Part shown: one piece after another, positions 17,613-40,769 of the stretch | Layout: every line of letters begins with the position of its first letter | Position numbering within the stretch: the first letter of the stretch is position 1 | Virus record (IMG/VR): IMGVR_UViG_3300049855_000348 | Location: 1 to 64,000 of that record | Reading direction: 5' to 3' (one strand) | DNA: 64,000 bases | Notes under the pieces: model-generated | Databases searched by the model: none | What the model saw: the letters and a program-made list of their open reading frames with translations, nothing else | What the model was told of the DNA's origin: nothing | Position numbers and translations under genes: made by a program

Positions 17613-17859
17613 AAAAGTTCCATTCGTCCAAGAACCAGACACGTTCATCACTGCAAAACCAGTCGAGAAAAAGGCTGGGAAGCAATGGGTCGTGAAGAAA
17701 GTTCACACCACTATCAAAATCATGGATCAAGATATTCCAATGAAAGATCCAGAAAGTGGTGTGGTTGGTTTTCTGCCAGTTCTGGATGATTATGAGAAAG
17801 CACTTCGTTTCGTAGATGGTGATAGAAGTCTTCTAGCCGGTATCGAACCGGTCACTTGA
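17605..17859 (+). CDS. Hypothetical protein
   Basis: 84 aa, coupled overlap. Confidence 0.55.
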   Translation: MPEKVPFVQEPDTFITAKPVEKKAGKQWVVKKVHTTIKIMDQDIPMKDPESGVVGFLPVLDDYEKALRFVDGDRSLLAGIEPVT

Positions 17860-18008
17860 CTCCTATGGTAGCCGTGAAAGCGCAAGGTGTAAAACCCCCA
17901 GGCGAGTAGAACGGAAGGAATCCGAAGTGGGTAGTTGACCAAGCTGTGGCCACAGCCGTCAGCGAGAGCGGAGGAGATAGGTGGGTTCGATTCCTGCCGG
18001 AGTCACCA
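17858..18008 (+). ncRNA. 151-nt tRNA-like RNA (acceptor stem, T-arm and CCA around a large insert)
   Basis: GACTCC pairs with GGAGTC-A-CCA; GTGGG-TTCGATT-CCTGC; carries the GYAA/CCCAR module. Confidence 0.65.
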
Positions 18009-18015
18009 AATGCTG

Positions 18016-18056
18016 TGTCCGTGATGGTTATTTTCTTCGGAAACCCATCACGGACA
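18016..18056 (+). terminator. 12-bp perfect hairpin (terminator or processing stem)
   Basis: TGTCCGTGATGG / CCATCACGGACA. Confidence 0.6.
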
Positions 18057-18086
18057 AGAACCTACGACACACTTGCCAAATTGTTC

Positions 18087-18114
18087 TTGCAACTGAAATC
18101 AGTCTTGCTACACC
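18087..18114 (+). promoter_or_regulatory. Candidate promoter of the + tRNA-array leader
   Basis: TTGCAA-N16-TACACC. Shares AGTCTYGCTA with the site upstream of the - leader (40952-40979). Confidence 0.4.
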
Positions 18115-18128
18115 TCCACGTACCAGCC

Positions 18129-18278
18129 ATGAGACCTCTCACCTCCATACCAGCCGTTCGCGCCACCAAGTGGCAAGCGAAGCCCATGACCAAAACGGTC
18201 AATGGCGCACAGGGTTGCTTTGGAGTGACAACTGAACGCAATCAGGCCGATCACATTCCGGAACCAGGGTTCATGTAG
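18129..18278 (+). CDS. Attenuator leader peptide of the + tRNA array (49 aa; alternative start 18186)
   Basis: MRPLTSIPAVRATKWQAKPMTKTVNGAQGCFGVTTERNQADHIPEPGFM. Its 3' end is complementary to the terminator 5' arm. Confidence 0.8.
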   Translation: MRPLTSIPAVRATKWQAKPMTKTVNGAQGCFGVTTERNQADHIPEPGFM

Positions 18279-18307
18279 CAGACAAGGGTAAAACCTCCAA
18301 GCCACAT

Positions 18308-18345
18308 GAACCCCGGGACCAAAAAGTCTCGGGGTTCTTCTTTTT
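18308..18345 (+). terminator. Attenuator terminator before the + tRNA array
   Basis: GAACCCCGGGAC-CAAAAA-GTCTCGGGGTTC-TTCTTTTT. Confidence 0.9.
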
Positions 18346-18490
18346 CTGATCCTCACGGATCTTGACAACTTTATAATCGTGGAAGCCAATGAGGGGAGAA
18401 ATCCCTTCATTCTTGGACCTACCATCCTGTTCTACTAGACAGGGAAGCCTGTGGGGAGAAATCCTCTAGCCGTGGTGGTGGTCCTGGTAT

Positions 18491-18565
18491 CGTCGAGTAT
18501 TTCAGCGGAAGAATATCTGCATGACATGCAGAAGGTCGGTGGTTCGATCCCACCCTCGACGACCA
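18491..18565 (+). tRNA. tRNA-Val(GAC)
   Basis: Cloverleaf, loop ATGACAT, encoded CCA. Confidence 0.9.
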
Positions 18566-18570
18566 AACAA

Positions 18571-18648
18571 TGCGGAGTAACTGGAGATGGAACCAGCCCA
18601 GCCTCATAAGCTGAACAAACGTGTGTTCGAGTCACACCTCCGCAACCA
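18571..18648 (+). tRNA. tRNA-Met(CAT); Met versus Ile2 not resolvable
   Basis: Cloverleaf, loop CTCATAA, CCA. Confidence 0.88.
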
Positions 18649-18649
18649 T

Positions 18650-18839
18650 TTGCAAGGACCTCTCTGCCCACCATCTCGATCCTAAGAAGAAAGAAGACAA
18701 CATCGGTACGATGGTCAGAAGAAGAGTGGCTATCAAAACTTTGGAAATCGAACTGCAAAAGTGTCTCTGCGTGTGTGAGAACTGTCATCGCAAGATCCAT
18801 GCAGGTATCATCAAACCTTTTCTCAGTGCTGGATCATGA
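18650..18839 (+). pseudogene. Truncated HNH endonuclease remnant
   Basis: HHLDP.KK...KC.CVCENCHRKIH begins right after the tRNA CCA with no start context. Confidence 0.65.
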
Positions 18840-18886
18840 CCGAACGCCTGTGGTCATTCCCTGGCGGGCACTCGGATTCTTCACAT

Positions 18887-18963
18887 GGTGGTCGTAGCTC
18901 AATGGATAGAGCACTGGACTGTGGCTCCAGCGGCTGTGGGTTCGACTCCCATCGATCACACCA
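18887..18963 (+). tRNA. tRNA-His(GTG)
   Basis: Cloverleaf, loop CTGTGGC, G-1 present, A73. Confidence 0.92.
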
Positions 18964-18970
18964 GTTCATT

Positions 18971-19047
18971 GTGCGGAGTACGCGCCTGACCCAGGCAAGA
19001 GGGTTTGCTCTAACCTCCCAGAGAAGAACGGGAGGTTGCTTCGGCAT
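18971..19047 (+). ncRNA. Putative structured spacer RNA (three hairpins in a closing stem)
   Basis: GCCTG/CAGGC, AGAG/CTCT, AACCTCCC/GGGAGGTT. Confidence 0.4.
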
Positions 19048-19121
19048 GGCTTGGTCGCTCAACGGCAGGGCGCTGGTTTGAAAAACCAGAGACGAAGGTT
19101 CGACTCCTTCTCAAGCCACCA
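19048..19121 (+). tRNA. tRNA-Phe(GAA)
   Basis: Cloverleaf, loop TTGAAAA. Confidence 0.92.
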
Positions 19122-19133
19122 TCTCCTTCTCAC

Positions 19134-19211
19134 GGTCGGTTCACTGCATGGTGCAGTGTGCGCAAGGACAGTCCCCTAAGCACGGCGGTTCGATTCCCCG
19201 GCTGACCACCA
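19134..19211 (+). ncRNA. tRNA-like RNA with no canonical anticodon loop
   Basis: GGTCGGT/GCTGACC-A-CCA, TTCGATT loop, GC-GCAA-GG..CC-CCTAA-GC in place of the anticodon arm. Confidence 0.7.
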
Positions 19212-19221
19212 TTTTTTTCAT

Positions 19222-19294
19222 CGGCTGGAATAGGTGCGCGTAAGGCATCAGATCCCCTCAAGCGATGGAGGTTCGATTCCTCCCTGGCCGACCA
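19222..19294 (+). ncRNA. tRNA-like RNA lacking a D-arm
   Basis: CGGCTGG/CTGGCCG-A-CCA, perfect GGAGG-TTCGATT-CCTCC, module GC-GTAA-GG..CC-CCTCAA-GC. Confidence 0.7.
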
Positions 19295-19296
19295 AG

Positions 19297-19402
19297 TACG
19301 ACTTCTCGGGTTCCGCAAGGAACGATCGTCCTACTGGCTACAACGGTGAAAATCCGGTGGATGCCAGAGGTGGTGGGATGGCTCACCAAATAAACTGAGA
19401 CT
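19297..19402 (+). ncRNA. Structured RNA A (paralog of RNA B)
   Basis: ACGAC start, CTCGG/CTGAG closing stem, GCAA tetraloop, AATAAA before the closing strand. Confidence 0.55.
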
Positions 19403-19407
19403 CATAA

Positions 19408-19484
19408 GCACCGATCGGCTGGTGGAAAAGCTACCTCCCTTTCAAGGAGATTCTTCGCGGGTTCGACTCCCGTTCGGTGTACCA
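19408..19484 (+). tRNA. tRNA-Glu(TTC)
   Basis: Cloverleaf, loop CTTTCAA. Confidence 0.88.
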
Positions 19485-19590
19485 ACGACGGAGCACAGTG
19501 ATCGAAAGATCGACCGGCTAGGCAACTCGCAAGAGTGCTCGAAAGGGCGGAGTCTAGTGGGGTGTAAGCACCTCGAATAAACTGTGAGTT
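19485..19590 (+). ncRNA. Structured RNA B (paralog of RNA A)
   Basis: ACGAC start, CACAG/CTGTG closing stem, GAAA and GCAA tetraloops, AATAAA. Confidence 0.55.
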
Positions 19591-19592
19591 AT

Positions 19593-19666
19593 GGTCCTTT
19601 CTGTCAGTGGCAGGCAGCCTGATTCTCAGTCAGACAACGTCGGTTCGATTCCGACAAGGACTACCA
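19593..19666 (+). tRNA. tRNA-Glu(CTC)
   Basis: Cloverleaf, loop TTCTCAG. Confidence 0.88.
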
Positions 19667-19669
19667 GCA

Positions 19670-19767
19670 AGAGCGGGACACTGGTTCGAGGCCAGTCATC
19701 GCAAGATGTAGCTCAGGGTGAAAACGTAAGGCATCAAACCCCCAAGTAATCCGGAAGAGCACGCTCT
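19670..19767 (+). ncRNA. Permuted (T-AS-D order) tRNA mimic with inserted module
   Basis: AGAGCG/CGCTCT closing; CTGG-TTCGAGG-CCAG; CATC-GCAA-GATG; TA-GCTC...GAGC. Confidence 0.55.
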
Positions 19768-19771
19768 ATTT

Positions 19772-19849
19772 GTTCCTGAGGACTAACGGCTAGGTCACCT
19801 CCCTGTCACGGAGTCATTCAAGTGGGTTCAACTCCCATCAGGAACGCCA
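19772..19849 (+). tRNA. tRNA-Asp(GTC)
   Basis: Cloverleaf, loop CTGTCAC, G73. Confidence 0.9.
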
Positions 19850-19853
19850 ACAT

Positions 19854-19927
19854 CCACGCTTCGTCTAATGGCAGGGCACCGATCTGATACGTCGGATACC
19901 AAGGTTCGATTCCTTGAGCGTGGACCA
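19854..19927 (+). tRNA. tRNA-Ile(GAT)
   Basis: Cloverleaf, loop CTGATAC. Confidence 0.88.
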
Positions 19928-19941
19928 CTTCAGTTTCACAT

Positions 19942-20016
19942 TGTGGGATGGCCTATGTGGTAGGGCACCCGGTTGTTACCCGGACTATACTGGTTCGACT
20001 CCAGTTCCCACAGCCA
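19942..20016 (+). tRNA. tRNA-Asn(GTT)
   Basis: Cloverleaf, loop TTGTTAC. Confidence 0.92.
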
Positions 20017-20021
20017 CTTTT

Positions 20022-20097
20022 GGGGTCGTAGCTCAATTGGCAGAGCACCTGTTTTGCACGCAGGATGTTAGCGGTTCAAGTCCGCTCGATTCCACCA
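20022..20097 (+). tRNA. tRNA-Ala(TGC)
   Basis: Cloverleaf, G3:U70. Confidence 0.95.
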
Positions 20098-20167
20098 CGC
20101 GGGAGTAATCTGAGAAATCAGAGAGAATTACCAGCCTCACAGCCGGCAAGGAGTAGACTGTGGTTTT

Positions 20168-20243
20168 GGGGAGTTAGCTCATCTGGTAGAGCGCGAGCAT
20201 GGCATGTTCGAGGCGAGGAGTTCAAGTCTCCTACTCTCCACCA
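20168..20243 (+). tRNA. tRNA-Ala(GGC)
   Basis: Cloverleaf, G3:U70. Confidence 0.92.
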
Positions 20244-20256
20244 CTTTCAATCATAC

Positions 20257-20340
20257 GGGCGGCGATATCTCAGAAGCGTAAGGATGATCCCCCAAGTTAT
20301 GAGAAAATCCTATGGGGTGAAAGCCCTCAACTGTCCACCA
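20257..20340 (+). ncRNA. tRNA-like RNA with an Ala-type acceptor (G3:U70, A73, CCA) and a TGAAAGC T-loop
   Basis: GGGCGG/CTGTCC-A-CCA; TGGGG-TGAAAGC-CCTCA; module GC-GTAA-GG..CC-CCCAA-GT. Confidence 0.6.
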
Positions 20341-20342
20341 CT

Positions 20343-20432
20343 CGATCGGAACGTCAGTCGCAGCGTAAGGCTTTTATCAAATCCCCAAGCTGTGCAGTAA
20401 CGCAACTGCTGGTGAAAGACCAGCCTGATCAC
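20343..20432 (+). ncRNA. tRNA-like RNA with a TGAAAGA T-loop and no encoded CCA
   Basis: GATCGG/CTGATC; GCTGG-TGAAAGA-CCAGC; module GCAGC-GTAA-GG..CC-CCAA-GCTGT. Confidence 0.55.
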
Positions 20433-20440
20433 TCTTCAAA

Positions 20441-20523
20441 CGAAACCCTGGCGGTGAAAAACCGCTTCCTCGGCGCATCCCCTACGTTGGTCTACCTCTG
20501 AAGTTTATCGACCCAGGGCTTCG
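20441..20523 (+). ncRNA. Structured RNA with a T-loop-like first hairpin
   Basis: CGAAACCCTGG/CCAGGGCTTCG closing; GCGG-TGAAAAA-CCGC. Confidence 0.45.
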
Positions 20524-20602
20524 TGTTTCTGCTAGCTAGATTCATGGGTACCATCAGCGACATCGACGATCAACTCTACGTTCAGCACATCAAGTAACGC
20601 AT

Positions 20603-20677
20603 ACGTCGATAGCTCCAATGTAGAGCGACGGTTTCCAAAACCGTTGGTTGGGGGTTCAAGTCCCTCTCGACGTGCCA
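20603..20677 (+). tRNA. tRNA-Trp(CCA)
   Basis: Cloverleaf, loop TTCCAAA. Confidence 0.92.
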
Positions 20678-20682
20678 TTCAC

Positions 20683-20757
20683 TGAGAGATAGTTCAACGG
20701 TAGAACGCTGCCCTCTGGAGGCAGATGCTAGAGGTTCGAGTCCTCTTCTCTCAACCA
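20683..20757 (+). tRNA. tRNA-Gln(CTG)
   Basis: Cloverleaf. Confidence 0.95.
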
Positions 20758-20760
20758 CAC

Positions 20761-20835
20761 TCAGGAATAGTTCAACGGTAGAACGCTGACCTTTGGAGTC
20801 AGTTGCTCCAGGTTCGAGTCCTGGTTCCTGAACCA
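20761..20835 (+). tRNA. tRNA-Gln(TTG)
   Basis: Cloverleaf. Confidence 0.95.
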
Positions 20836-20843
20836 TTTCACAT

Positions 20844-20922
20844 CTGCGTGTAGCTCAGCCTGGAACAGAGCACTTGCCTTGGGAGCAAGGGGTCGGAGGT
20901 TCAAATCCTCTCACGTAGACCA
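20844..20922 (+). tRNA. tRNA-Pro(TGG)
   Basis: Cloverleaf, loop CTTGGGA. Confidence 0.92.
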
Positions 20923-20927
20923 TTCAT

Positions 20928-21009
20928 GACGGTCGAGTCGAAAGTCGGGCGCTCCGGCATCAGATTGCAACCCTGATGACAGGTGGTTGAACTCCACCGA
21001 TCGTCTCCA
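20928..21009 (+). tRNA. tRNA-Cys(GCA) with an enlarged D-arm
   Basis: Loop TTGCAAC, U73, D region about 8 nt longer than normal. Confidence 0.8.
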
Positions 21010-21014
21010 TTCAC

Positions 21015-21090
21015 GTGTGTGTATCTCAGTGGCTAGAGAGCTTCCTTGCCAAGGAAGAGGTCGCAGGTTCAAGTCCTGTCACACACTCCA
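21015..21090 (+). tRNA. tRNA-Gly(GCC)
   Basis: Cloverleaf, U73. Confidence 0.95.
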
Positions 21091-21093
21091 ACA

Positions 21094-21160
21094 GGGGCAA
21101 ATGCGGGTTCAACTCCCGCTGCGACTTCGGTCGTATCGTCTAACCCGGTAGGACGGCCCC
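21094..21160 (+). ncRNA. Circularly permuted tRNA fold (YrlA/Y-RNA-like T-AS-D order); structure may extend to about 21280
   Basis: GGGGC-AAAT-GCGGG-TTCAACT-CCCGC-TGCGAC-TTCG-GTCGTA-TC-GTCT-AACCCGGT-AGGAC-G-GCCCC. Confidence 0.75.
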
Positions 21161-21282
21161 ACCCCGTGCGGATTGGATACCCGCACGGAATCCGAAGTCC
21201 TCAGGTTCAAGCCAAGGCAACCGCTCGCCGAGCGGAATACAAAATGCGGCTAGAGCAGGGGAGCACGAACGTGGCCCCGTTT

Positions 21283-21356
21283 GCCGATGTAGGTCAATGG
21301 TAGATCTGCTGCCTTCCAAGCAGAGGACGCGGGTTCGATTCCCGCCATCGGCTCCA
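21283..21356 (+). tRNA. tRNA-Gly(TCC)
   Basis: Cloverleaf, U73. Confidence 0.92.
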
Positions 21357-21360
21357 TCAT

Positions 21361-21436
21361 GTGTGCCTAGCTCAATGGATAGAGCATCTGACTACGGATC
21401 AGAAGGTTGAAGGTTCGAGTCCTTCGGTACACGCCA
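21361..21436 (+). tRNA. tRNA-Arg(ACG)
   Basis: Cloverleaf. Confidence 0.95.
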
Positions 21437-21469
21437 TTGCATAGCGATCTTTTTGGCTAGCATGTAACC

Positions 21470-21997
21470 ATGTCACTCAAAGATGCCCTCTTTCACTTTC
21501 GTGATCTTGGTTACTACGTTGATGATCAAGGAAATGTATTCAACCCAAGAGGAAAGATTCTTCGGTGTTCAACAAACAAAGATGGTTACAAAAGAATTAC
21601 CACAAGAATGAGAAATCATCCAGTTCATGGGGATTGGTGCCCTAAGGTTGAGGTTCACCGTCTTGCCGGTTATCAGAAGTTCGGAGACAAAATCTTCACC
21701 GAAGGACTTGAGATCTGTCACGATGATGGCGATAAGCGAAACAACGCCAAAGACAATCTGCGACTCGATACGCACAAAAGTAATATGATGGATGTTCCTC
21801 AAGAGGTAAGGATCAATAGAGCAAGACGTGCTGGTAGAGAACATGCCAAGCTAACAGATGAGCAGGTTGCTCACATTCGTTCATCTGGCATGACTCTGAA
21901 ACAGATCATGCAAACATACGGTATCAGTAAGTCTGGTGCCTCCTACGTCAGATCAGGAAAGACTTACGCCAGCCCGTGTATCCCCTCGCTTTCCTAA
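21470..21997 (+). mobile_element. HNH homing endonuclease inserted in the tRNA array
   Basis: VHRL...ICHDDGDKRNN..DNL, C-terminal HTH-like segment; AT-richer than its flanks. Confidence 0.85.
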
Positions 21998-22051
21998 AGC
22001 GGTGAAAGGGTAACTGGACACATGCAGGTTCAAATCCTGCCTCGGGTACCA
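21972..22051 (+). tRNA. Non-canonical rewired tRNA-Arg(CCT)-like, 80 nt
   Basis: Acceptor stem, T-arm and CCA; anticodon arm TCGCT-TTCCTAA-AGCGG nested inside CCC/GGG; AACTGG lies 3' of it. Confidence 0.7.
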
Positions 22052-22054
22052 CAT

Positions 22055-22132
22055 CGGGGTCCTAGTACGGGAGTGTCTGCATACCATTCGGTCACTACAG
22101 CCTCGGCGGTTCAATCCCGCCAACCTCGACCA
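22055..22132 (+). ncRNA. tRNA-like RNA lacking a D-arm (G3:U70, A73, CCA)
   Basis: CGGGGT/ACCTCG; GGCGG-TTCAATC-CCGCC; single long bulged arm ending in loop TCTGCATAC. Confidence 0.6.
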
Positions 22133-22135
22133 CAT

Positions 22136-22211
22136 GCGATCGTATTTCAATTGGAAGAACACCACCCTCCGAAGGTGGAAGGTGCAGGTTCGAGTCCTGC
22201 CGATCGCGCCA
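22136..22211 (+). tRNA. tRNA-Arg(CCG)
   Basis: Cloverleaf. Confidence 0.92.
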
Positions 22212-22214
22212 TCT

Positions 22215-22290
22215 GGTGACGTAGCTCAATGGACAGAGCTTCCAGCTTCTACCTGGATGGTTGGAGGTTCGAGTCCTCCCGTCATCGCCA
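22215..22290 (+). tRNA. tRNA-Arg(TCT)
   Basis: Cloverleaf. Confidence 0.95.
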
Positions 22291-22294
22291 TCAT

Positions 22295-22369
22295 GCTGCC
22301 ATAGCCGAGTGGTAAGGCACTTCATTCGTAACGAAGAGACCGGGTGTTCGATTCACCCTGGCAGCACCA
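22295..22369 (+). tRNA. tRNA-Thr(CGT)
   Basis: Cloverleaf. Confidence 0.9.
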
Positions 22370-22373
22370 TCAC

Positions 22374-22449
22374 GCCCCCATAGCTCAGTTGGTAGAGCAA
22401 CAGTTTTGTAAACTGTAGGTCGTCGGTTCGATCCCGACTGGTGGCTCCA
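22374..22449 (+). tRNA. tRNA-Thr(TGT)
   Basis: Cloverleaf. Confidence 0.93.
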
Positions 22450-22456
22450 TTTTCAC

Positions 22457-22530
22457 GCTGCTATAGTTCAGTGGTAAAACACGTCCTTGGTAAGGACGAG
22501 CCCCAGGTTCAATTCCTGGTAGCAGCACCA
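22457..22530 (+). tRNA. tRNA-Thr(GGT)
   Basis: Cloverleaf. Confidence 0.93.
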
Positions 22531-22535
22531 TTCAT

Positions 22536-22611
22536 CCATCAGTAGCGTAATTGGCAGCGCAGCGGGTTTTTACCCCGTGGGTTGTGAGTTCGACTCTCAC
22601 CTGATGGACCA
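22536..22611 (+). tRNA. tRNA-Lys(TTT)
   Basis: Cloverleaf. Confidence 0.92.
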
Positions 22612-22617
22612 TCGCAT

Positions 22618-22693
22618 GCATCCATAGCTCAACTGGCAGAGCACTCGGTTCTTACCCAAGGGGTTGGAGGTTCAAATCCTCCTGGATGCACCA
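22618..22693 (+). tRNA. tRNA-Lys(CTT)
   Basis: Cloverleaf. Confidence 0.92.
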
Positions 22694-22707
22694 TCATTAC
22701 ATAAGTC

Positions 22708-22941
22708 ATGCCAGCATGGAAATGGATGATCCTGAAGTTCTGTACCAGAGCGCATTTCATGCGGCTCATAGCAACCTTGATCATCCTCATCGCAGGCTTT
22801 CAATCTCTCTACTACCAGAAGATTGAAGACACGTGGTTGATCCTGGTTGGTGCAGTGATGAACCACTACTTCAACCACAAAGAAGCTGCGAACGTCACGG
22901 AAGAAGACAAGAATCCGGACGACGAATGCAAGGTCGGTTAG
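22708..22941 (+). CDS. Small two-TM membrane protein embedded in the tRNA array
   Basis: Two hydrophobic segments and an acidic tail; the stop codon lies inside tRNA-Val. Confidence 0.55.
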   Translation: MPAWKWMILKFCTRAHFMRLIATLIILIAGFQSLYYQKIEDTWLILVGAVMNHYFNHKEAANVTEEDKNPDDECKVG

Positions 22942-23006
22942 TTCAGCGGTAGAACGCTTCTCTTACACGGAAGATGTCGGGGGTTCGATCCCCTCACCGA
23001 CTACCA
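22932..23006 (+). tRNA. tRNA-Val(TAC)
   Basis: Cloverleaf. Confidence 0.93.
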
Positions 23007-23011
23007 CTTGC

Positions 23012-23091
23012 CGGTCTGTATCGGCTCGGTCTTATAAGCCGTCGAAACCGTAATTGGTTACATGAGGGTTCGACTCCCTCCAGACCGACCA
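23012..23091 (+). tRNA. Non-canonical rewired tRNA-Ile(TAT)-like, 80 nt
   Basis: Same segment lengths as 21972-22051; loop CTTATAA; CGG/CCG covaries with CCC/GGG. Confidence 0.75.
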
Positions 23092-23126
23092 CAAGGCTTC
23101 CACGATTCCCCTCCAAGGAGAACGCC

Positions 23127-23678
23127 ATGGCACCCGGTGCCTGCATAGTGCTGAACAACTCGTATGCCTTCCTCTCGATCAACAACTGGTTCGAGGCGAT
23201 GCGTCTCGTCGTCCGTGGCCGCGCCGTGCCGCTGGCAAACTACGAGACCAAGATCCGGGCAGAGCGTGAAGAGTTCGACGCACCAGCAGTCGTGATGCTG
23301 AAGCACCACGTGAACCTGGGGCGGAGAAGGCAACCTTTCACCCTGCCATCACATCGCAACATCTGGGTCCGTGATGGTGGGCACTGCGCCTACTGCAATC
23401 ACCCGCTGACGCTGCGGACAGTGACCAAGGAACACGTGATGCCCAGGTCACGCGGTGGAGAAGACAGCCTCTTGAACGTCGTGTCCGCCTGTGGCGACTG
23501 CAACGCCAAGAAGTCGAACCGCACGCCGGCAGAAGCCGGCATGAAGTTCCGTGACGGCATCGAACTGCGTCACCTCAACGATGAGGAGAAGCTGACGGTG
23601 CTGCTCAAGACCTCCCAGAGCCACGAACGGAAGACGTGGCTGGGGTTCCTCAAGAAGCAGGGTCTGACGCTGTTCTGA
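23127..23678 (+). CDS. HNH endonuclease (McrA-like)
   Basis: VLNNSY, RNIWVRDGGHCAYC, T.EHV.PRSRGG, NVV.AC..CN.KK.NRTP; SD AAGGAG. Confidence 0.88.
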   Translation: MAPGACIVLNNSYAFLSINNWFEAMRLVVRGRAVPLANYETKIRAEREEFDAPAVVMLKHHVNLGRRRQPFTLPSHRNIWVRDGGHCAYCNHPLTLRTVTKEHVMPRSRGGEDSLLNVVSACGDCNAKKSNRTPAEAGMKFRDGIELRHLNDEEKLTVLLKTSQSHERKTWLGFLKKQGLTLF

Positions 23679-23896: not shown

Positions 23897-24578
23897 TCAC
23901 TCCATCAAGCCGTCCAGGTCCCCCTTCATCCAAGCACGCACCGTGATGGATCGCCCTGTGCGGTGGTCCCTCACGTTGTCGTTCTGCACCTGGATGGTGC
24001 GGATCTTGTCACCACGCTCGCCGGAGCCTATCTGCTGCCGGCGATCGTCGTTTTGATCGGTATGGTGTTGGGTAGCGATGCCCCCCGCCAGACGCTCCTG
24101 TAACAGGGCCATGGCAGCATGCTTGTTCGACAACTGGTGGCGCTCTTTGTCGGCACGGACAGTCATGCCCGTCGGACGATGGGTGATCTGCACACCCGAC
24201 TCAGTCTTGTTGCGGTGCTGACCACCTGGGCCAGATCCACGGACGGTGATGATATCCAGGTCGCGTTCATCCAGCACGAACTTCTGCTGCTGGCTTCCAT
24301 CGATCACCGCCACGGTGACCGTCGAGCTATGGACACGACCCTTGCGCTCAGTGGGTGGAACCCGCTGCCAACGATGGCCGCCTGCTTCTTGGCTGAAGGC
24401 TTCTTTGGCTCCCTTACCAGTAACGGTGAGCCGCAGAAAGCCGTGAGACTCTTGATCCACTACAACTTCAAAGACCCCTCCGCGCTCCCCATTTGCGATA
24501 GATGGTGAGGTGTTCGCGCACGAGCAATCGTGCGTCCTCGCCGCCTTCAGCGGCTCTGATTTCGAGGTGGATAGTCAT
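23897..24578 (-). CDS. Class I peptide chain release factor lacking domain 1 (about 226 aa), needing a +1 programmed frameshift at 24468-24473
   Basis: Frame 0: MTIHLEIRAAEGGEDA...RRGL-TGA. +1 frame: EVVVDQ...EAGGHRWQRVPPTERKGRVHSSTVTVAV...GSGPGGQHRNKTESGV..KIRT. Confidence 0.88.
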
Positions 24579-29753: not shown

Positions 29754-30350
29754 ATGCGCTTCTTCCTCCTGCTCCTCCTGTCCTTCTCCACTCTGTTCGC
29801 CGGTGATCCTCCGGCTGCCGAGGCCAAGCTGCCTGCCGATGTGCAGAAGGTAGTCGATGAACGTGATGCTGCGGTGGCCAAGGCCAAGGCGGTCTTCGAT
29901 GCGGCTCAGGCCAAGGCGACGACCGAGGCTATCGCCAAGCTGGAGAAGGTGGTTGTCGCCATCACAAAAAAGGGCGATCTCGCCAACGCTACGGCTATCC
30001 AGAAGTTGGTCGACGAGTACAAGGCCGGGCTTCCGGATCTATTGGGTAAGAAACCAGAAACAAAAATCGATCTTGAGGAGGCGATTGTTGGTGTGAAGTG
30101 GAAATTTTACTGGCAAGGTCTTGGTGGTGAAAACAAGATCATGAGATTTGCCCGTAAGGGTGTCATTAGTGAAGGGTCCAACTTCGGTGAAAACAGTTAT
30201 CGCATCAAGGACGGTGTTCTACAACTTCTCAATCAGAATGGTGGAATACACAGCACTCTCACTCTGAGGGCTGATGGGAATCTTGAAAGTGGAGACACTT
30301 CTGAATCAACCTGGAAGGGGAAGTGCTTCTTGATCAAGGCCGAGAAATAA
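29754..30350 (+). CDS. Secreted or periplasmic protein with a signal peptide
   Basis: MRFFLLLLLSFSTLFA signal, Ala/Lys-rich helices, SD AAGGA. Confidence 0.7.
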   Translation: MRFFLLLLLSFSTLFAGDPPAAEAKLPADVQKVVDERDAAVAKAKAVFDAAQAKATTEAIAKLEKVVVAITKKGDLANATAIQKLVDEYKAGLPDLLGKKPETKIDLEEAIVGVKWKFYWQGLGGENKIMRFARKGVISEGSNFGENSYRIKDGVLQLLNQNGGIHSTLTLRADGNLESGDTSESTWKGKCFLIKAEK

Positions 30351-31146
30351 TCCTGATCAGTTCGTTGTTTTTCACGTCCTGACAGAATGATGGGCGATCA
30401 ATAAGAAGGCTGTCGTTTTCAAATACGTCGATCGACAGCCTTTCAACTTCTGCCCATCTATAGAGAAAATGAAAGTGGTAGGAGTAGATCTCGAAGTCTG
30501 ACTCAACCTGAAGAAGTCGACCATCGATGTAGCGAACGGCTGGATGAATGCCTTTGTGATTCTGAAGAGAGTCGCGGCCAACGTGCTTGGCTCCAACTCG
30601 CTTCATCGCTATGGAAAACCACCGCTCATCAAGACAATGATGTTTTTCAGTATCGCAGATCTTTTGCCGAAAGTCCAGATCTTCTGAAAATTCTTTGAAC
30701 CACTTTTCTTGAGTAGAAGAAAAGTAGTCATTTTTGAACCATGTCCAATATCCTCCGATGCGATCATAATGACTGATTATTTCAACATCGTCAGAGATCA
30801 GATTTTTTACTAGATCGTAGTTTCCGTACATGGCATCCATGTCGGTCCACATAAAACAATCGTAATCTTTGATGATGTCGTTGAAGATCCAATAGAAGAG
30901 CGGTCGAAGATCACAAATTTTATAGGCATGCGGAAGACCCTTGAACTCTGGAATTATCTTTCTTACACGCTCGTTGATGTCCTCCATCGACATCTTTACG
31001 AATTCCATGTTAGGATACATCTTGGGAGGAGGTGTATCAGCAATAACGATGTACTTGTCGATTCCCTGCTTCGCACCTGAACGTCCAGTCAGGTGCCAGA
31101 TCTTAGGGTAAGGTCCCTGCCAAACGTTGAGCATGCAAGAACGCAT
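30334..31146 (-). CDS. Glycosyltransferase-like protein (GT-A, DUF6625-like)
   Basis: YKICDLRP...I...YDCFMWTDMDAMYGN, DE..F motif. Confidence 0.75.
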   Translation of the reverse strand: MRSCMLNVWQGPYPKIWHLTGRSGAKQGIDKYIVIADTPPPKMYPNMEFVKMSMEDINERVRKIIPEFKGLPHAYKICDLRPLFYWIFNDIIKDYDCFMWTDMDAMYGNYDLVKNLISDDVEIISHYDRIGGYWTWFKNDYFSSTQEKWFKEFSEDLDFRQKICDTEKHHCLDERWFSIAMKRVGAKHVGRDSLQNHKGIHPAVRYIDGRLLQVESDFEIYSYHFHFLYRWAEVERLSIDVFENDSLLIDRPSFCQDVKNNELIRIISRP

Positions 31147-31147
31147 C

Positions 31148-39878: not shown

Positions 39879-39967
39879 TGGCGGAAGTGGCACGAATCGA
39901 ACGTGCAAGACCCGTGAAGGTCTGTTGAGGTTCAAGCTCAGTCCCCTCGCCTATAGGGAGCACTTCC
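39879..39967 (-). tRNA. tRNA-Ser(TGA)
   Basis: Long variable arm, G73, CCA. Confidence 0.9.
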
Positions 39968-39972
39968 ATGAA

Positions 39973-40064
39973 TGGCGGATACGGCAGGATTTGAACCTGC
40001 GGGTGACTTGCGCCACCTCCTAGTTTCGAGCTAGGTGCGATAAGCCGGGCTCTGCCACGTATCC
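39973..40064 (-). tRNA. tRNA-Ser(CGA)
   Basis: Long variable arm, G73. Confidence 0.92.
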
Positions 40065-40069
40065 ATGAA

Positions 40070-40162
40070 TGGCGGATTGCTAGGGAGTCGGACCCTCAAC
40101 GTGTTTCCACGTTTCATCGCTTTCCAGGCGAGTACGGTTAGCCACCACCGTCAACACAATCC
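40070..40162 (-). tRNA. tRNA-Ser(GGA)
   Basis: Long variable arm, G73. Confidence 0.88.
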
Positions 40163-40167
40163 ATGAA

Positions 40168-40259
40168 TGGCGGAACGGGTGAGATTTGAACTCACGGGTG
40201 ACTTTCGCCACCTCTTCCTTAGCAAGGAAGTGCAATAGGCCAGACTCTGCCACCGTTCC
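40168..40259 (-). tRNA. tRNA-Ser(GCT)
   Basis: Long variable arm, G73. Confidence 0.93.
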
Positions 40260-40263
40260 ATGA

Positions 40264-40347
40264 TGGTCTCTGAGGTGGGACTCGAACCCACAAAGCTGCG
40301 ATGTTTAGGACCGCAAGGTGTGCCATTCCCTATGAAGCCACTCAGAG
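40264..40347 (-). tRNA. Atypical tRNA-Leu(TAA)-like
   Basis: GCGGT-CCTAAAC-ATCGC (C33), expanded D region, short variable loop. Confidence 0.65.
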
Positions 40348-40351
40348 AAGT

Positions 40352-40429
40352 TGGTGTCCCATGCAGGAGTCGAACCTGCAAAGATCTGCATTTTGAATGC
40401 AGCGCGTCTGCCAATTGCGCCAATGGGAC
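40352..40429 (-). tRNA. tRNA-Leu(CAA), short variable loop
   Basis: Cloverleaf, A73. Confidence 0.9.
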
Positions 40430-40430
40430 G

Positions 40431-40507
40431 TGGTATCCACGAAGAGATTTGAACTCTTACTGTTCGGTGCCTAAGACCGATGCCTCTGCCGGTTGGGCTA
40501 CGTGGAC
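40431..40507 (-). tRNA. tRNA-Leu(TAG), short variable loop
   Basis: Cloverleaf, A73. Confidence 0.9.
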
Positions 40508-40513
40508 GTGAAA

Positions 40514-40599
40514 TGGTGGGATAGGCTGGAGTCGAACCAACAGTGGCGGTGAAGCGTCACGTTTACAGCGTGGTGAGCCTTCCAATGCTCAACTATCCC
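40514..40599 (-). tRNA. tRNA-Tyr(GTA)
   Basis: Long variable arm, loop CTGTAAA. Confidence 0.9.
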
Positions 40600-40609
40600 A
40601 GATGAAAAA

Positions 40610-40688
40610 TGGTACCCGTGACAGGAGTCGAACCTGCAATTTTACTACCACCTCAAGGTAGCGCGTCTGCCAATTTCGCCACACGGGC
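40610..40688 (-). tRNA. tRNA-Leu(GAG), short variable loop
   Basis: Cloverleaf, A73. Confidence 0.9.
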
Positions 40689-40691
40689 ATG

Positions 40692-40769
40692 TGGTACCGG
40701 GGGCGGGAGTCGAACCCGCAAAGAACATGGACCTGAACCATGCGCGTCTGCCTGTTTCGCCACCCCGGC
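40692..40769 (-). tRNA. tRNA-Leu(CAG), short variable loop
   Basis: Cloverleaf, A73. Confidence 0.9.

What the first reader, a model, noticed from the sequence alone, without database searches (positions are those of the whole stretch)
17858..20432. Six copies of an unnamed internal-loop module carried on tRNA-like scaffolds
The pattern (G/A)C-GYAA-GG-[5-12 nt loop]-CC-CC(N0-2)AR-G(C/T) occurs at 17880-17903, 19160-19181, 19238-19263, 19724-19747, 20276-20297 and 20363-20390. The closing pair varies compatibly (GC/GC, AC/GT, GC/GT). Five hosts have an acceptor stem and T-arm (four with encoded CCA), with the module replacing or preceding the anticodon arm. In the sixth it sits in the D-loop of a permuted fold. 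The CC..AAG strand resembles GNRA tetraloop receptors. Inference: decoy substrates for anticodon nucleases or synthetases, protein-binding scaffolds, or self-assembling RNAs.
Basis: partly seen in the sequence, partly recalled or inferred. Interest (0 to 1): 0.76.

Follow-up and report, generated by a model that had tools for sequence, protein, structure and literature searches.

The report
Conserved RNA hairpin on tRNA-like scaffolds
A large uncultured phage carries nine copies of one short RNA hairpin with an invariant internal loop, mounted on tRNA-derived scaffolds, a terminator hairpin and a small RNA next to its tmRNA gene; the hairpin is kept in its closest relatives, matches no described RNA family, and is most likely a docking site for a still unknown factor.

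Summary
All six copies are at the stated coordinates, all on the + strand. A looser pattern gives 10 window hits against 0.72 expected. The 220-kb phage genome holds three more copies: one degenerate copy in a terminator-associated hairpin at 18278-18302, and two in a ~335-nt promoter-to-terminator RNA just upstream of the phage tmRNA. The motif is N-GYAAGG-[4-12 nt]-CCCY(N0-2)AR-N'. Its flanking helix covaries. G, AAGG, CCC and A are invariant in 12 instances.

Close relatives keep it. It is identical in one while the arm beside it differs at about 40% of positions. It survives as conserved islands in an otherwise ~50% diverged RNA in another. Relatives at 61% protein identity lack that small RNA, and none of the loci read from them holds the module. 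Rfam and pattern scans of IMG/VR, one metagenome collection and 185,000 species genomes gave only chance hits.

The hosts are tRNA-derived scaffolds: three with a canonical T-arm and CCA, two three-way minihelices, and one circularly permuted tRNA. Because the module also sits in D-arm positions and outside any tRNA-like fold, it is not an anticodon-arm mimic. My best reading is a portable binding hairpin for a protein or RNA polymerase (confidence 0.4). A tetraloop-receptor-like tertiary module is the main rival. Function is untested.

The parts
17880..17903 (+). Module copy c1 (GC-GCAA-GG-UGUAAAA-CC-CCCAG-GC)
   Evidence: Regex hit. Model R1 scores it 32.1 bits. It is 100% identical in relative L130.
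17858..18008 (+). c1 host: a 151-nt cloverleaf-like tRNA-like RNA. It has an acceptor stem, arm 1 (CCGU/ACGG) carrying the module in the D-arm position, arm 2, a T-arm with GGTTCGATTCC, and encoded CCA at 18006-18008. It starts at the stop codon of the 84-aa ORF.
   Evidence: Consensus fold with L130 gives 34 pairs, 3 of them compensatory in arm 2. The flanks are invariant and the central ~55 nt differs at about 40% of positions.
18278..18302 (+). Degenerate module copy c8 (GC-AGACAA-GG-GUAAAA-CC-UCCAA-GC) at the tip of the long hairpin 18268-18312
   Evidence: R1 scores it 24.1 bits.
18308..18347 (+). Strong intrinsic terminator (12-bp stem plus T-run). It shares 5 nt with the c8 hairpin and folds with it into one three-way structure.
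   Evidence: Terminator scan. Fold z-score -3.55, with 0 of 200 shuffles as stable.
19160..19181 (+). Module copy c2. Its 3' strand contains CCUAAG.
   Evidence: 28.1 bits.
19134..19211 (+). c2 host: tRNA-like RNA with a 7-bp acceptor stem, a 7-bp hairpin with a UGG loop in place of the D-arm, the module in place of the anticodon arm, a T-arm with one bulge, and ACCA. A T7 run follows it.
   Evidence: MFE fold and the sequence.
19238..19263 (+). Module copy c3
   Evidence: 28.9 bits.
19222..19294 (+). c3 host: tRNA-like RNA with a 7-bp acceptor stem, no D-stem, the module in the anticodon-arm position, a canonical T-arm (GGAGG-UUCGAUU-CCUCC) and ACCA.
   Evidence: Fold and the sequence. A near-identical contig occurs in a wetland run (record 16).
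19724..19747 (+). Module copy c4. Its closing helix is AC/GU.
   Evidence: 35.2 bits.
19667..19771 (+). c4 host: a circularly permuted tRNA-like fold. In order it has the anticodon-stem 3' strand AGAGCG, GGAC, a T-arm (ACUGG-UUCGAGG-CCAGU), an acceptor stem capped by a tetraloop (CAUC-GCAA-GAUG), UA, a D-stem (GCUC/GAGC) with the module inserted in the D-loop, A, and the anticodon-stem 5' strand CGCUCU. It lies between tRNA-Glu and tRNA-Asp.
   Evidence: MFE fold. The assignment to tRNA parts is my reading of the sequence. It is replaced by 99 unrelated letters in the rhizosphere relative.
20276..20297 (+). Module copy c5. Its closing helix is GC/GU.
   Evidence: 28.2 bits.
20257..20340 (+). 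c5 host: a three-way minihelix. It has an acceptor-like stem (GGGCGG/CUGUCC), the module hairpin, a GGGGU-GAAA-GCCCU hairpin, and ACCA.
   Evidence: Fold. It is a paralogue of the c6 host (alignment).
20363..20390 (+). Module copy c6. It has the longest apical loop (12 nt).
   Evidence: 33.5 bits.
20344..20433 (+). c6 host: a three-way minihelix. It has a closing stem (GAUCGG/CUGAUC), the module hairpin, a T-arm-sized hairpin (GCUGG-UGAAAGA-CCAGC), then ACU with no CCA.
   Evidence: Fold z-score -1.76. The whole element is missing from the rhizosphere relative, where 17 letters replace 20341-20452.
20450..20464 (+). GCGGU-GAAAA-ACCGC hairpin. It is one of seven GUGAAA motifs on the + strand of 17.9-23.1 kb (17874, 19346, 19718, 20317, 20412, 20454, 22002), six of which read GGUGAAA.
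   Evidence: Six of the genome's 26 + strand GGTGAAA fall in 2.4% of the genome. Seven of 20 GAAA-tetraloop hairpins fall in the same region.

Best explanation
The module is a portable RNA hairpin. Its invariant asymmetric internal loop (5' GYAA / 3' C-Y-(N)-A-R, next to an invariant GG:CC step) is the recognition surface for one common trans-acting partner. That partner is most likely a protein of the phage or its host, and possibly RNA polymerase.

The phage presents this hairpin many times on stable, untranslated RNAs:
- tRNA-derived scaffolds, with the module in the D-loop or replacing the anticodon arm. These keep the acceptor stem, T-arm and CCA, so the host tRNA-processing enzymes should cut them out of the array transcript and leave them stable.
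- A separate ~335-nt RNA next to the tmRNA gene, with two copies.
- A terminator-associated hairpin in the 3' UTR that leads into the tRNA array.

Shown here: the motif is real and non-random, its helices covary, its loop bases are invariant, it is kept in close relatives while the surrounding sequence diverges, and its hosts are tRNA-derived.

Inferred: that the scaffolds are processed and stable, that the partner is a protein, and whether the copies titrate a factor (sponge or decoy), assemble an RNP, or regulate in cis.
For: Non-random and strand-specific: 6 copies against about 0.01 expected in the window for the full pattern, and 10 against 0.72 for the loose pattern. All nine genomic copies lie in untranslated RNA regions, in the sense of the flanking RNA genes.

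Hairpin with a sequence-constrained loop: the proximal helix covaries (C-G, G-C, A-U, G-U; 0 of 500 shuffles reach the score). G, AAGG, CCC and A never vary in 12 instances. The apical loop is free in length and sequence.

Purifying selection:
- In L130 (97% nt identity overall) the module and scaffold ends are 100% identical, while the neighbouring arm has about 22 changes in 55 nt with compensatory pairs.
- In L134 the small RNA is about 50% diverged, yet both modules persist.
- Both L134 copies carry the same unusual variant (closing C-G replaced by A/A, and AAG by AGA). This is what co-evolution with a shared partner, or gene conversion, would give.

Context independence argues for a self-contained module read in trans. 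It occurs in the D-arm position (c1, c4), the anticodon-arm position (c2, c3), an arm of a three-way junction (c5, c6), and plain hairpins (c7, c7b, c8).

Scaffold logic: acceptor stems, T-arms and encoded CCA are retained.
Against: No candidate binding protein was identified. The neighbouring ORFs have no Pfam or NCBIfam RNA-binding domains, and the genome has no TROVE, RtcB or CCA-adding enzyme. The only complex prediction I tried was not run by the tool.

No expression or processing data exist. Metatranscriptome contigs identical to parts of the region could be carried-over DNA.

The distal GG:CC pairing never varies, so it is not proven by covariation.

Most copies are paralogues, so part of their likeness is shared descent. 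Gene conversion could explain the concerted L134 variant without any partner.

The last 2.7 kb of the array and the second tRNA array have no copy.
Confidence: 0.4

Rival explanations
1. The module is a tertiary-structure element, a GNRA/GAAA tetraloop-receptor-like internal loop. It docks a tetraloop hairpin of the same or another RNA and so stiffens or assembles tRNA-like RNAs that have lost their normal D-arm or anticodon arm.
For: The 3' strand CC(N)AAG resembles the CCUAAG strand of the 11-nt receptor, and c2 has it exactly. [quoted passage not shown] GAAA-tetraloop hairpins are strongly enriched here: 7 of the genome's 20 on the + strand lie in 2.4% of its length, and 6 of 26 GGTGAAA. 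In the paralogous c5 and c6 hosts a module hairpin and a GAAA/GAAAG hairpin stand side by side in a three-way junction. c4 carries a GCAA-capped stem.
Against: The 5' strand is GYAAGG, not UAUGG, and the loop is 4 x 4-6 nt rather than 2 x 3. c2, c3, c7, c7b and c8 have no GNRA hairpin in the same RNA. The small RNA upstream of tmRNA has none in any of the three relatives. In c1 and c4 the GAAA lies 2 nt 5' of the module, as a junction strand, too close to dock. No structure was computed.
Confidence: 0.2
2. The module is a cis-acting processive antitermination or anti-Rho element of the nut/put kind. It would let RNA polymerase read through terminators into long untranslated stable-RNA operons.
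For: c1 and c8 lie between an mRNA operon and a strong terminator (18308-18337) that is followed by the tRNA array, and no sigma-70-like promoter was found in between. c8 is built into that terminator structure. A C-rich, G-poor, rut-like tract lies between c1 and c8. c7b and c7 lie between a conserved promoter and a terminator that is maintained by compensatory changes just upstream of tmRNA. From my own recall of the lambda sequence, not checked here, GCGGU-GAAAA-ACCGC at 20450 resembles boxB (GCCCU-GAAAA-AGGGC).
Against: This does not explain why the element would need acceptor stems, T-arms and CCA. There is no copy in the last 2.7 kb of the array or in the second array. Relatives at 61% identity have the same terminator-tmRNA arrangement with no module. 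The unit upstream of tmRNA may simply be an independent small RNA with its own terminator. The promoter scan covers sigma-70 consensus only.
Confidence: 0.1
3. The module is a small ligand-binding aptamer (metabolite or ion) that controls folding or termination.
For: It is a short hairpin with an invariant internal loop. Two tandem copies lie upstream of Shine-Dalgarno sequences and a terminator, and one copy is fused to a terminator. In G000 a CCUUACG segment between the two copies of the small RNA upstream of tmRNA can pair with the 5' strand of c7 as an alternative structure.
Against: Most copies sit on tRNA-like scaffolds that have no expression platform. The anti-module segment is not conserved in L134. 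There was no Rfam riboswitch hit even at E = 10.
Confidence: 0.07
4. The hosts are decoy substrates for host anticodon nucleases or aminoacyl-tRNA synthetases.
For: The scaffolds are tRNA-like, with acceptor stem, T-arm and CCA. The phage invests heavily in translation parts: 35 tRNAs, a tmRNA and an RF1-like gene. The c4 host is a tRNA-like fold open at the anticodon loop, which looks like a cleaved tRNA.
Against: The module is in the anticodon-arm position in only 2 of 9 copies, and three copies are not on a tRNA-like fold at all. Its apical loop is variable and carries no U33/anticodon-like pattern. What is conserved is the internal loop, not the loop an anticodon nuclease would cut.
Confidence: 0.05
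5. The module is a neutral relic: the remains of one ancestral pseudo-tRNA segment copied around by duplication, with no function of its own.
For: The hosts fall into paralogous pairs (c1/c4, c2/c3, c5/c6). Several apical loops share residues (GGCAUCA in c3 and c4). Whole hosts are gained and lost between close relatives.
Against: The loop bases are invariant while the stems covary and the apical loops diverge. The module survives as islands in a ~50% diverged RNA. It is unchanged next to a hypervariable arm.
Confidence: 0.08

Closest known systems
Phage T4 stable RNAs species 1 and 2 (rnaC, rnaD) in the T4 tRNA cluster
   Same: They are small non-tRNA RNAs encoded inside a phage tRNA gene cluster. 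A homing endonuclease gene sits in the same cluster (segB in T4, HNH ORFs here). rnaC has a tRNA-like T-arm (CCGGGUUCGAAUCCCGG) and rnaD ends in CACCA (annotation and sequence). That their function is still unknown is my own knowledge, not tested here.
   Different: There is no sequence or motif relationship. The module model R1 scores at most 8 bits anywhere in the T4 cluster. T4 has two such RNAs and no repeated module. Here at least six module-bearing hosts and five further tRNA-like elements occur.
GAAA tetraloop / 11-nt receptor and class-R2 (IC3-like) GNRA receptors
   Same: All are an asymmetric internal loop next to C:G pairs, with a CC(N)AAG-type strand and adjacent adenines. GAAA hairpins co-occur in the same region (PMC2275092).
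   Different: The partner strand is GYAAGG, not UAUGG. The loop is larger. Only GG:CC is available, not CCC:GGG. Five copies lack any GNRA partner in the same RNA. Docking is untested.
Engineered 'tRNA scaffold' for recombinant RNA display (Ponchon and Dardel; cited from my own knowledge)
   Same: In c2 and c3 a foreign hairpin replaces the anticodon arm of an otherwise tRNA-shaped RNA that keeps its acceptor stem, T-arm and CCA. This is the design used to obtain stable, correctly processed RNA in bacteria.
   Different: These are natural and multi-copy. They also come in other topologies: D-loop insertion, circular permutation and three-way minihelices. Their processing and stability have not been shown.
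Multi-site protein-sponge sRNAs (CsrB/RsmZ type) and phage operator hairpins (lambda boxB/N, HK022 put)
   Same: A short conserved hairpin motif is repeated in untranslated RNAs. Some copies read (C/U)AAGGA, close to the CsrA core A(N)GGA.
   Different: The A after GG is not conserved (A in 5, C in 5, U in 2 of 12 instances), so the CsrA GGA core is not met. There are no Rfam hits to any of these families. Binding is untested.
Circularly permuted tRNA genes (described in the red alga Cyanidioschyzon merolae; cited from my own knowledge)
   Same: The c4 host has the 3' half of a tRNA-like fold upstream of the 5' half.
   Different: Here the acceptor ends are joined by a GCAA tetraloop and the break is at the anticodon loop. 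There is no anticodon, and the D-loop carries the module. It is not a tRNA gene.

Membership tests
Rfam families (any of the 4227 models, including tRNA, tmRNA, YrlA, riboswitches, ribozymes, group I introns) | A covariance-model score at or above the family's gathering threshold over the module or its host | tested here: not met
   Only tRNA and tmRNA genes pass. No hit overlaps any module or host even at E <= 10. The best YrlA hits, at 27 bits against a threshold of 69, lie elsewhere on ordinary tRNAs.
Canonical tRNA | A cloverleaf with D-arm, 7-nt anticodon loop and T-arm that tRNA finders recognise | tested here: not met
   ARAGORN and the Rfam tRNA model call none of the six hosts. The hosts keep the acceptor stem, T-arm and CCA but have no anticodon loop.
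11-nt GAAA tetraloop receptor | The strands CCUAAG and UAUGG forming a 2 x 3 internal loop next to two C-G pairs | tested here: not met
   Only c2 has CCUAAG. No copy has UAUGG as the partner strand. The invariant 5' strand is GYAAGG.
11-nt GAAA tetraloop receptor | A GAAA tetraloop partner placed so that it can dock | tested here: inconclusive
   A partner hairpin is present beside the module in c5 and c6. It is absent from c2, c3, c7, c7b and c8. Docking geometry could not be tested.
CsrA/RsmA-binding sponge RNA | A GGA core (A(N)GGA) exposed in hairpin loops and conserved in all sites | tested here: not met
   The base after GG is A in 5, C in 5 and U in 2 of 12 instances.
Lambda-type nut site (boxA + boxB) | A boxB hairpin with a GNRA-like pentaloop, preceded by boxA and bound by an N-like protein | tested here: inconclusive
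   One boxB-like hairpin, GCGGU-GAAAA-ACCGC, lies at 20450-20464. No N-like protein or conserved boxA was identified. This concerns the GUGAAA hairpins, not the module.
Type III toxin-antitoxin RNA (ToxI-like repeats) | Tandem, near-identical direct repeats next to an endoribonuclease toxin gene | tested here: not met
   The copies are dispersed on different scaffolds and share only about 16 nt. Tandem-repeat structure was assessed from the sequence only; no tandem-repeat tool was run.
rRNA decoding-site or 16S 3'-end mimic (an idea raised during the work) | Significant local similarity of the module contexts to 16S or 23S rRNA | tested here: not met
   Local alignments of all nine contexts to E. 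coli 16S and 23S give z-scores of 2.3 or less against shuffles.

The most novel reading that the evidence does not exclude
A small clade of large environmental phages has evolved its own RNA display system. One recognition hairpin is grafted into tRNA-derived scaffolds, including a circularly permuted tRNA, and into a dedicated small RNA. The host's own tRNA-processing machinery would then deliver many stable copies that capture or recruit a specific host or phage factor. That factor could be a defence sensor, a translation or ribosome-rescue factor, or RNA polymerase. If so, this would be a natural counterpart of the engineered tRNA scaffold and a new kind of phage RNA sponge or RNP.
Probability: 0.3. 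Interest if true: 0.8.

Novelty: new variant of a known kind. Interest (0 to 1): 0.62.

Why it matters
Non-tRNA RNAs inside phage tRNA clusters have been known since T4's species 1 and 2 RNAs, and to my knowledge they remain unexplained. Here the non-tRNA elements share a defined, conserved and mutable motif. That gives a concrete handle: one hairpin to pull down, mutate or crystallise.

If the partner is a host factor, this would be a new counter-defence or takeover strategy, delivered through the tRNA-processing pathway. It would also be a natural precedent for the tRNA-scaffold trick used in RNA biotechnology.

The circularly permuted tRNA-like fold and the module-bearing small RNA next to a phage tmRNA add two further testable oddities.

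If the partner is a tetraloop, the module would be a new natural receptor class of use to RNA nanotechnology.

Tried and rejected
1. rRNA decoding-site or 16S 3'-end mimicry. This was suggested by GGGUGAAxxCGUAA and GGUAGCCGU. It was rejected because no context aligns to E. coli 16S or 23S better than shuffles.

2. Known RNA families. Rfam at gathering thresholds and at E <= 10 gave only tRNA and tmRNA.

3. Group I intron or an interrupted tRNA gene. There was no intron model hit, the hosts are too short, and no 3' exon was found.

4. Y RNA/Ro, RtcB repair or a CCA-adding enzyme as partners. None is encoded in the genome.

5. Spread beyond this clade. All scans gave only chance hits:
Only 2 of 116 loci had tRNAs, and none was near the hit.
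- The c1/c4-type pattern gave one hit, inside a coding region of an AT-rich phage.
- The c3/c4-type pattern in metagenome contigs gave one hit, in a human-gut coding region.
- The c6/c7-type pattern gave 0 hits in IMG/VR and 17 in 185,000 species genomes. All 17 lie inside open frames of at least 119 aa (16 of them over 240 aa), with no tRNA closer than about 550 nt.

6. Relatives through neighbouring genes.
- The MazG-like gene led only to unrelated phages without tRNA arrays.
- DnaE led to nothing in IMG/VR and reached only ~25% identity to isolated phages.
- A spurious ORF across c5 and c6 had no homologue.
- The MptE-like alignment found no IMG/VR relative.
- Whole-record searches of the assemblies behind L134, L136 and L137 are not possible because those records are not held.

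7. T4 rnaC and rnaD carry no module.

8. A complex prediction of the 84-aa upstream protein with the c1 arm was not run by the tool. It is no evidence either way.

9. A DNA-level reading (promoter or operator) was rejected. The spacing between the two conserved blocks varies from 4 to 12 nt, the motif occurs on one strand only, and the flanking helix covaries.

Full report
Setting. The window is the first 64 kb of a 220,489-bp IMG/VR virus record. The record has direct terminal repeats, is rated 100% complete, and has 56% G+C. It encodes T4-like baseplate wedge proteins and a DnaE-type polymerase that is only ~25% identical to anything in isolated phages. It carries 33 ARAGORN tRNAs in the window: 25 on the + strand at 18491-23006 and 8 on the - strand at 39879-40769. 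A tRNA-Asp(GUC) at 19772-19846 is seen only by Rfam. A tmRNA lies at genome 85462-85837 on the - strand. The sequence came from a freshwater sediment sample, judging by the run that holds it fully.

The observation. A looser form without the four-base prefix gives 10 window matches against 0.72 expected, and no shuffle out of 100 reaches 10. The prefix lowers the chance expectation about 64-fold. Genome-wide there are three further copies:
- c7, at genome 86024-86045 (-).
- c7b, at genome 86140-86164 (-). Here the pair that closes the loop is flipped from C-G to G-C.
- c8, a degenerate copy at window 18278-18302.
A covariance model built from the nine copies (R1) finds only these nine in the genome at E <= 10. 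All nine lie in untranslated regions and in the sense of the neighbouring RNA genes.

Anatomy of the module. I aligned twelve instances, orthologues included, without the degenerate c8. They give N-G-Y-A-A-G-G-[4-12 nt]-C-C-C-Y-(0-2 nt)-A-R-N'. G, AAGG, CCC and the first A of AR are invariant.
- The proximal helix is 83% paired. Four of its pairs show changes on both sides (C-G/G-C, A-U/C-G/U-A, G-C/A-U/G-U). No shuffle out of 500 reaches the observed covariation, and sliding the partner strand destroys the signal (nine paralogues alone).
- The distal GG:CC step never varies, so covariation cannot prove it. By inspection, a third pair extends it with different letters in several copies: U-A in c1, and A-U in c2, c5 and L134_B.
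- The apical loop is free in length and sequence.
So this is a hairpin whose conserved feature is an asymmetric internal loop.

The hosts.
- c1 (17858-18008) starts at the stop codon of an 84-aa ORF. Its consensus fold with a relative is a cloverleaf-like four-way junction. It has a 7-bp acceptor stem, arm 1 carrying the module in the D-arm position, arm 2, a T-arm with GGTTCGATTCC, and CCA.
- c2 (19134-19211) and c3 (19222-19294) are ~75-nt tRNA-shaped RNAs with the module where the anticodon arm should be. Both have a T-arm and ACCA.
- c5 (20257-20340) and c6 (20344-20433) are paralogous three-way minihelices. Each has a closing stem, the module hairpin, and a second hairpin reading GGUGAAAG in the T-arm position. 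c5 ends in ACCA and c6 in ACU.
- c4 (19667-19771) reads as a circularly permuted tRNA (fold; the assignment of parts is mine). In order it has the anticodon-stem 3' strand, a 4-nt variable region, a T-arm (ACUGG-UUCGAGG-CCAGU), an acceptor stem capped by a GCAA tetraloop, UA, a D-stem (GCUC/GAGC) with the module in the D-loop after AGGG, A, and the anticodon-stem 5' strand.
The module is not tied to the anticodon position.

Conservation in relatives.
- L130 is a 1.7-kb contig from another metagenome, 97% identical overall. It covers c1. The acceptor strands, the module arm and the T-arm are 100% identical. The central ~55 nt has about 22 changes, including three compensatory pairs in one hairpin (GCUGU-GGCC-ACAGC becomes GCCUC-GGCC-GGGGC).
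- The 586-aa MptE-like protein encoded next to c7b gave a graded series of relatives. L135 (87% aa identity) and L134 (84%) both carry two R1 hits in the same places.
- In the three-way alignment, the L134 RNA is only about half identical to G000. It still keeps the promoter (TTGACA-17 nt-TATAAA), both modules, two Shine-Dalgarno/AUG starts, a GGCGC...GCGCC hairpin, GUUGACACG, and a terminator maintained by compensatory changes.
- Both L134 modules carry the same variant: the closing C-G is replaced by A/A, and AAG by AGA.
- Relatives at 61% identity (L136, L137) have the tmRNA directly behind the gene's terminator, with no such RNA. None of the loci read from them holds the module.
- Contigs from rhizosphere, wetland and beach-sand runs show further close relatives. 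In the rhizosphere relative the c6 host is missing (17 letters replace 20341-20452) and the c4 host is replaced by 99 unrelated letters.
So the module is conserved within a narrow clade, while whole hosts come and go.

Spread elsewhere. Pattern scans of IMG/VR, one metagenome collection and 185,000 species genomes returned only chance-level hits, mostly in coding regions and none beside a tRNA gene. Rfam has nothing. T4's rnaC and rnaD, the classical non-tRNA RNAs of a phage tRNA cluster, do not contain it.

Context that bears on function.
- c1 and c8 lie in the 3' untranslated stretch of a helicase/MazG-like/84-aa operon. They sit upstream of a strong terminator (18308-18337), and the tRNA array follows. 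No sigma-70-type promoter was found in between.
- c8 folds together with that terminator into one unusually stable three-way structure (z = -3.55). A C-rich, G-poor tract lies between c1 and c8.
- c7b and c7 lie in a discrete unit of about 335 nt, running from a conserved promoter to a conserved terminator. Each module is followed by a strong Shine-Dalgarno sequence and a 2-6-codon ORF ending in UGA. The peptides are MH and MRH in G000, and MSRRR and MNITRK in L134. These ORFs are conserved in position but not in sequence.
- GAAA-loop hairpins and the heptamer GGUGAAA are 10-14-fold enriched in the array region.

Interpretation. The module has invariant unpaired bases, covarying flanking helices and a free apical loop. 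It is independent of context, present in many copies, preserved within diverging RNA, and changed in concert in one lineage. These are the marks of a hairpin read by a common trans-acting partner, and I commit to that reading at 0.4. The tRNA-derived scaffolds would then be the delivery vehicle. They keep the elements that tRNA-processing enzymes and the tRNA 'elbow' rely on: acceptor stem, GG in the D-loop, T-loop and CCA. The scaffolds should therefore be excised from the array transcript and be stable. That step is inferred from established knowledge of RNase P substrates and was not shown here.

I cannot tell what the partner is, or whether the copies titrate it, assemble with it, or regulate transcription or translation in cis. 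No RNA-binding protein could be named, and the one complex prediction I tried was not executed.

The main rival is a tetraloop-receptor-like tertiary module (0.2). The receptor-like strand and the GAAA hairpins beside it in c5 and c6 support it. The non-receptor 5' strand and the five copies without a partner loop count against it.

An antitermination element (0.1) would explain the two module-terminator-stable-RNA arrangements, but not the tRNA-like scaffolds. The decoy idea fails mainly because the conserved part is not in an anticodon-like position or loop.

Novelty and verdict. Non-tRNA RNAs in phage tRNA clusters and repeated binding hairpins are known kinds. This motif, its display on several tRNA-derived topologies including a permuted one, and its second home in a small RNA next to a phage tmRNA match nothing in Rfam or the sequence collections searched, and nothing I know of. 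I rate it a new variant of a known kind, real and conserved, restricted to a narrow clade, with function open. Interest 0.62.

Noticed in passing
outside the window: genome 85,850-86,230 (- strand); locus L007:1325-1710 (-): A discrete ~335-nt unit lies between the MptE-like gene and the tmRNA. It has a conserved TTGACA-17-TATAAA promoter, two modules, two strong Shine-Dalgarno/AUG mini-ORFs of 2-6 codons that all end in UGA (MH, MRH; MSRRR and MNITRK in L134), and a terminator kept by compensatory changes about 17 nt before the tmRNA 5' end. Relatives at 61% identity lack the unit.
   Followed up: partly
window 17920-17975: The central arm and linkers of the c1 tRNA-like RNA differ at about 40% of positions from a relative that is otherwise 97% identical. 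Compensatory pairs are kept. This is a local hypervariable or recombined segment between two perfectly conserved flanks.
   Followed up: partly
window 20923-21014, 21091-21282, 21972-22048, 22049-22135, 23007-23100: Five more non-canonical tRNA-like elements lie in the array without the module. They have T-arm-like GGTTCRA hairpins and acceptor-like stems, and several end in CCA. 21972-22048 scores 28 bits (threshold 29) on the tRNA model, and 23010-23089 scores 26.6 bits on tRNA-Sec.
   Followed up: partly
window 19772-19846: A tRNA-Asp(GUC) is found by Rfam (42.9 bits) but missed by ARAGORN. It appears to have an 8-nt variable loop and a C-U mismatch at the top of the anticodon stem. No tRNA-Cys was found in the genome.
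   Followed up: partly
window 23897-24460 (-): A 187-aa ORF matches only the C-terminal half of release factor 1 (positions 159-335 of 347, 177 bits, far below the full-length cut-off). It scores more weakly on PrfH and ArfB. It is either a truncated or split RF1-like gene or a novel short GGQ-domain factor, and it sits next to the tRNA array.
   Followed up: partly
window 18621-18839, 21470-21997, 22974-23678: HNH endonuclease ORFs are embedded in the tRNA array. Pfam confirms HNH for the two longer ones. The 72-aa ORF at 18621-18839 had no Pfam hit; its translation contains a CxxC/HxxxH-like string, so it may be an HNH remnant. The rhizosphere relative has a different 169-letter segment in place of 18551-18821, so the first one is an indel between close relatives.
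   Followed up: partly
window 18380-18470: Two copies of a second repeated element, GGAAGCC-(4-5 nt)-GGGGAGAAAUCC (a GAAA-tetraloop hairpin), lie directly upstream of the first tRNA of the array. GGAGAAATCC occurs only at these two places in the genome.
   Followed up: no
window 17874, 19346, 19718, 20317, 20412, 20454, 22002: The motif G(G)UGAAA(A/G) recurs seven times in the array region. Two of these are 5-bp hairpins with U-A-closed GAAAA/GAAAG pentaloops (20450-20464, 20408-20424). From my recall of the lambda sequence they resemble boxB. In c1 and c4 the motif lies 2 nt 5' of the module.
   Followed up: partly
window 18040-18199: A C-rich, G-poor tract (C 0.33-0.38, G 0.14-0.21), like a Rho-utilisation site, lies between the c1 host and the c8/terminator structure.
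   Followed up: no
window 30001-34000: A low-G+C island (0.43-0.46 against 0.56 genome-wide) holds a 953-aa ORF with a methyltransferase-like C-terminus and a DUF6625 protein. It may be recently acquired DNA.
   Followed up: no
window 18130-18773, 19247-19401, 19929-20146: Contigs of a sediment metatranscriptome run are identical to these stretches. This may mean the region is transcribed in nature, but DNA carry-over could not be excluded.
   Followed up: partly
window 19289-19407: The spacer after the c3 host holds a GCAA-tetraloop hairpin, a GGUGAAAA hairpin, and a Shine-Dalgarno-like GAGGUGG followed by a 6-codon ORF (MAHQIN) ending in UGA. This recalls the mini-ORFs of the small RNA upstream of tmRNA.
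   Followed up: no
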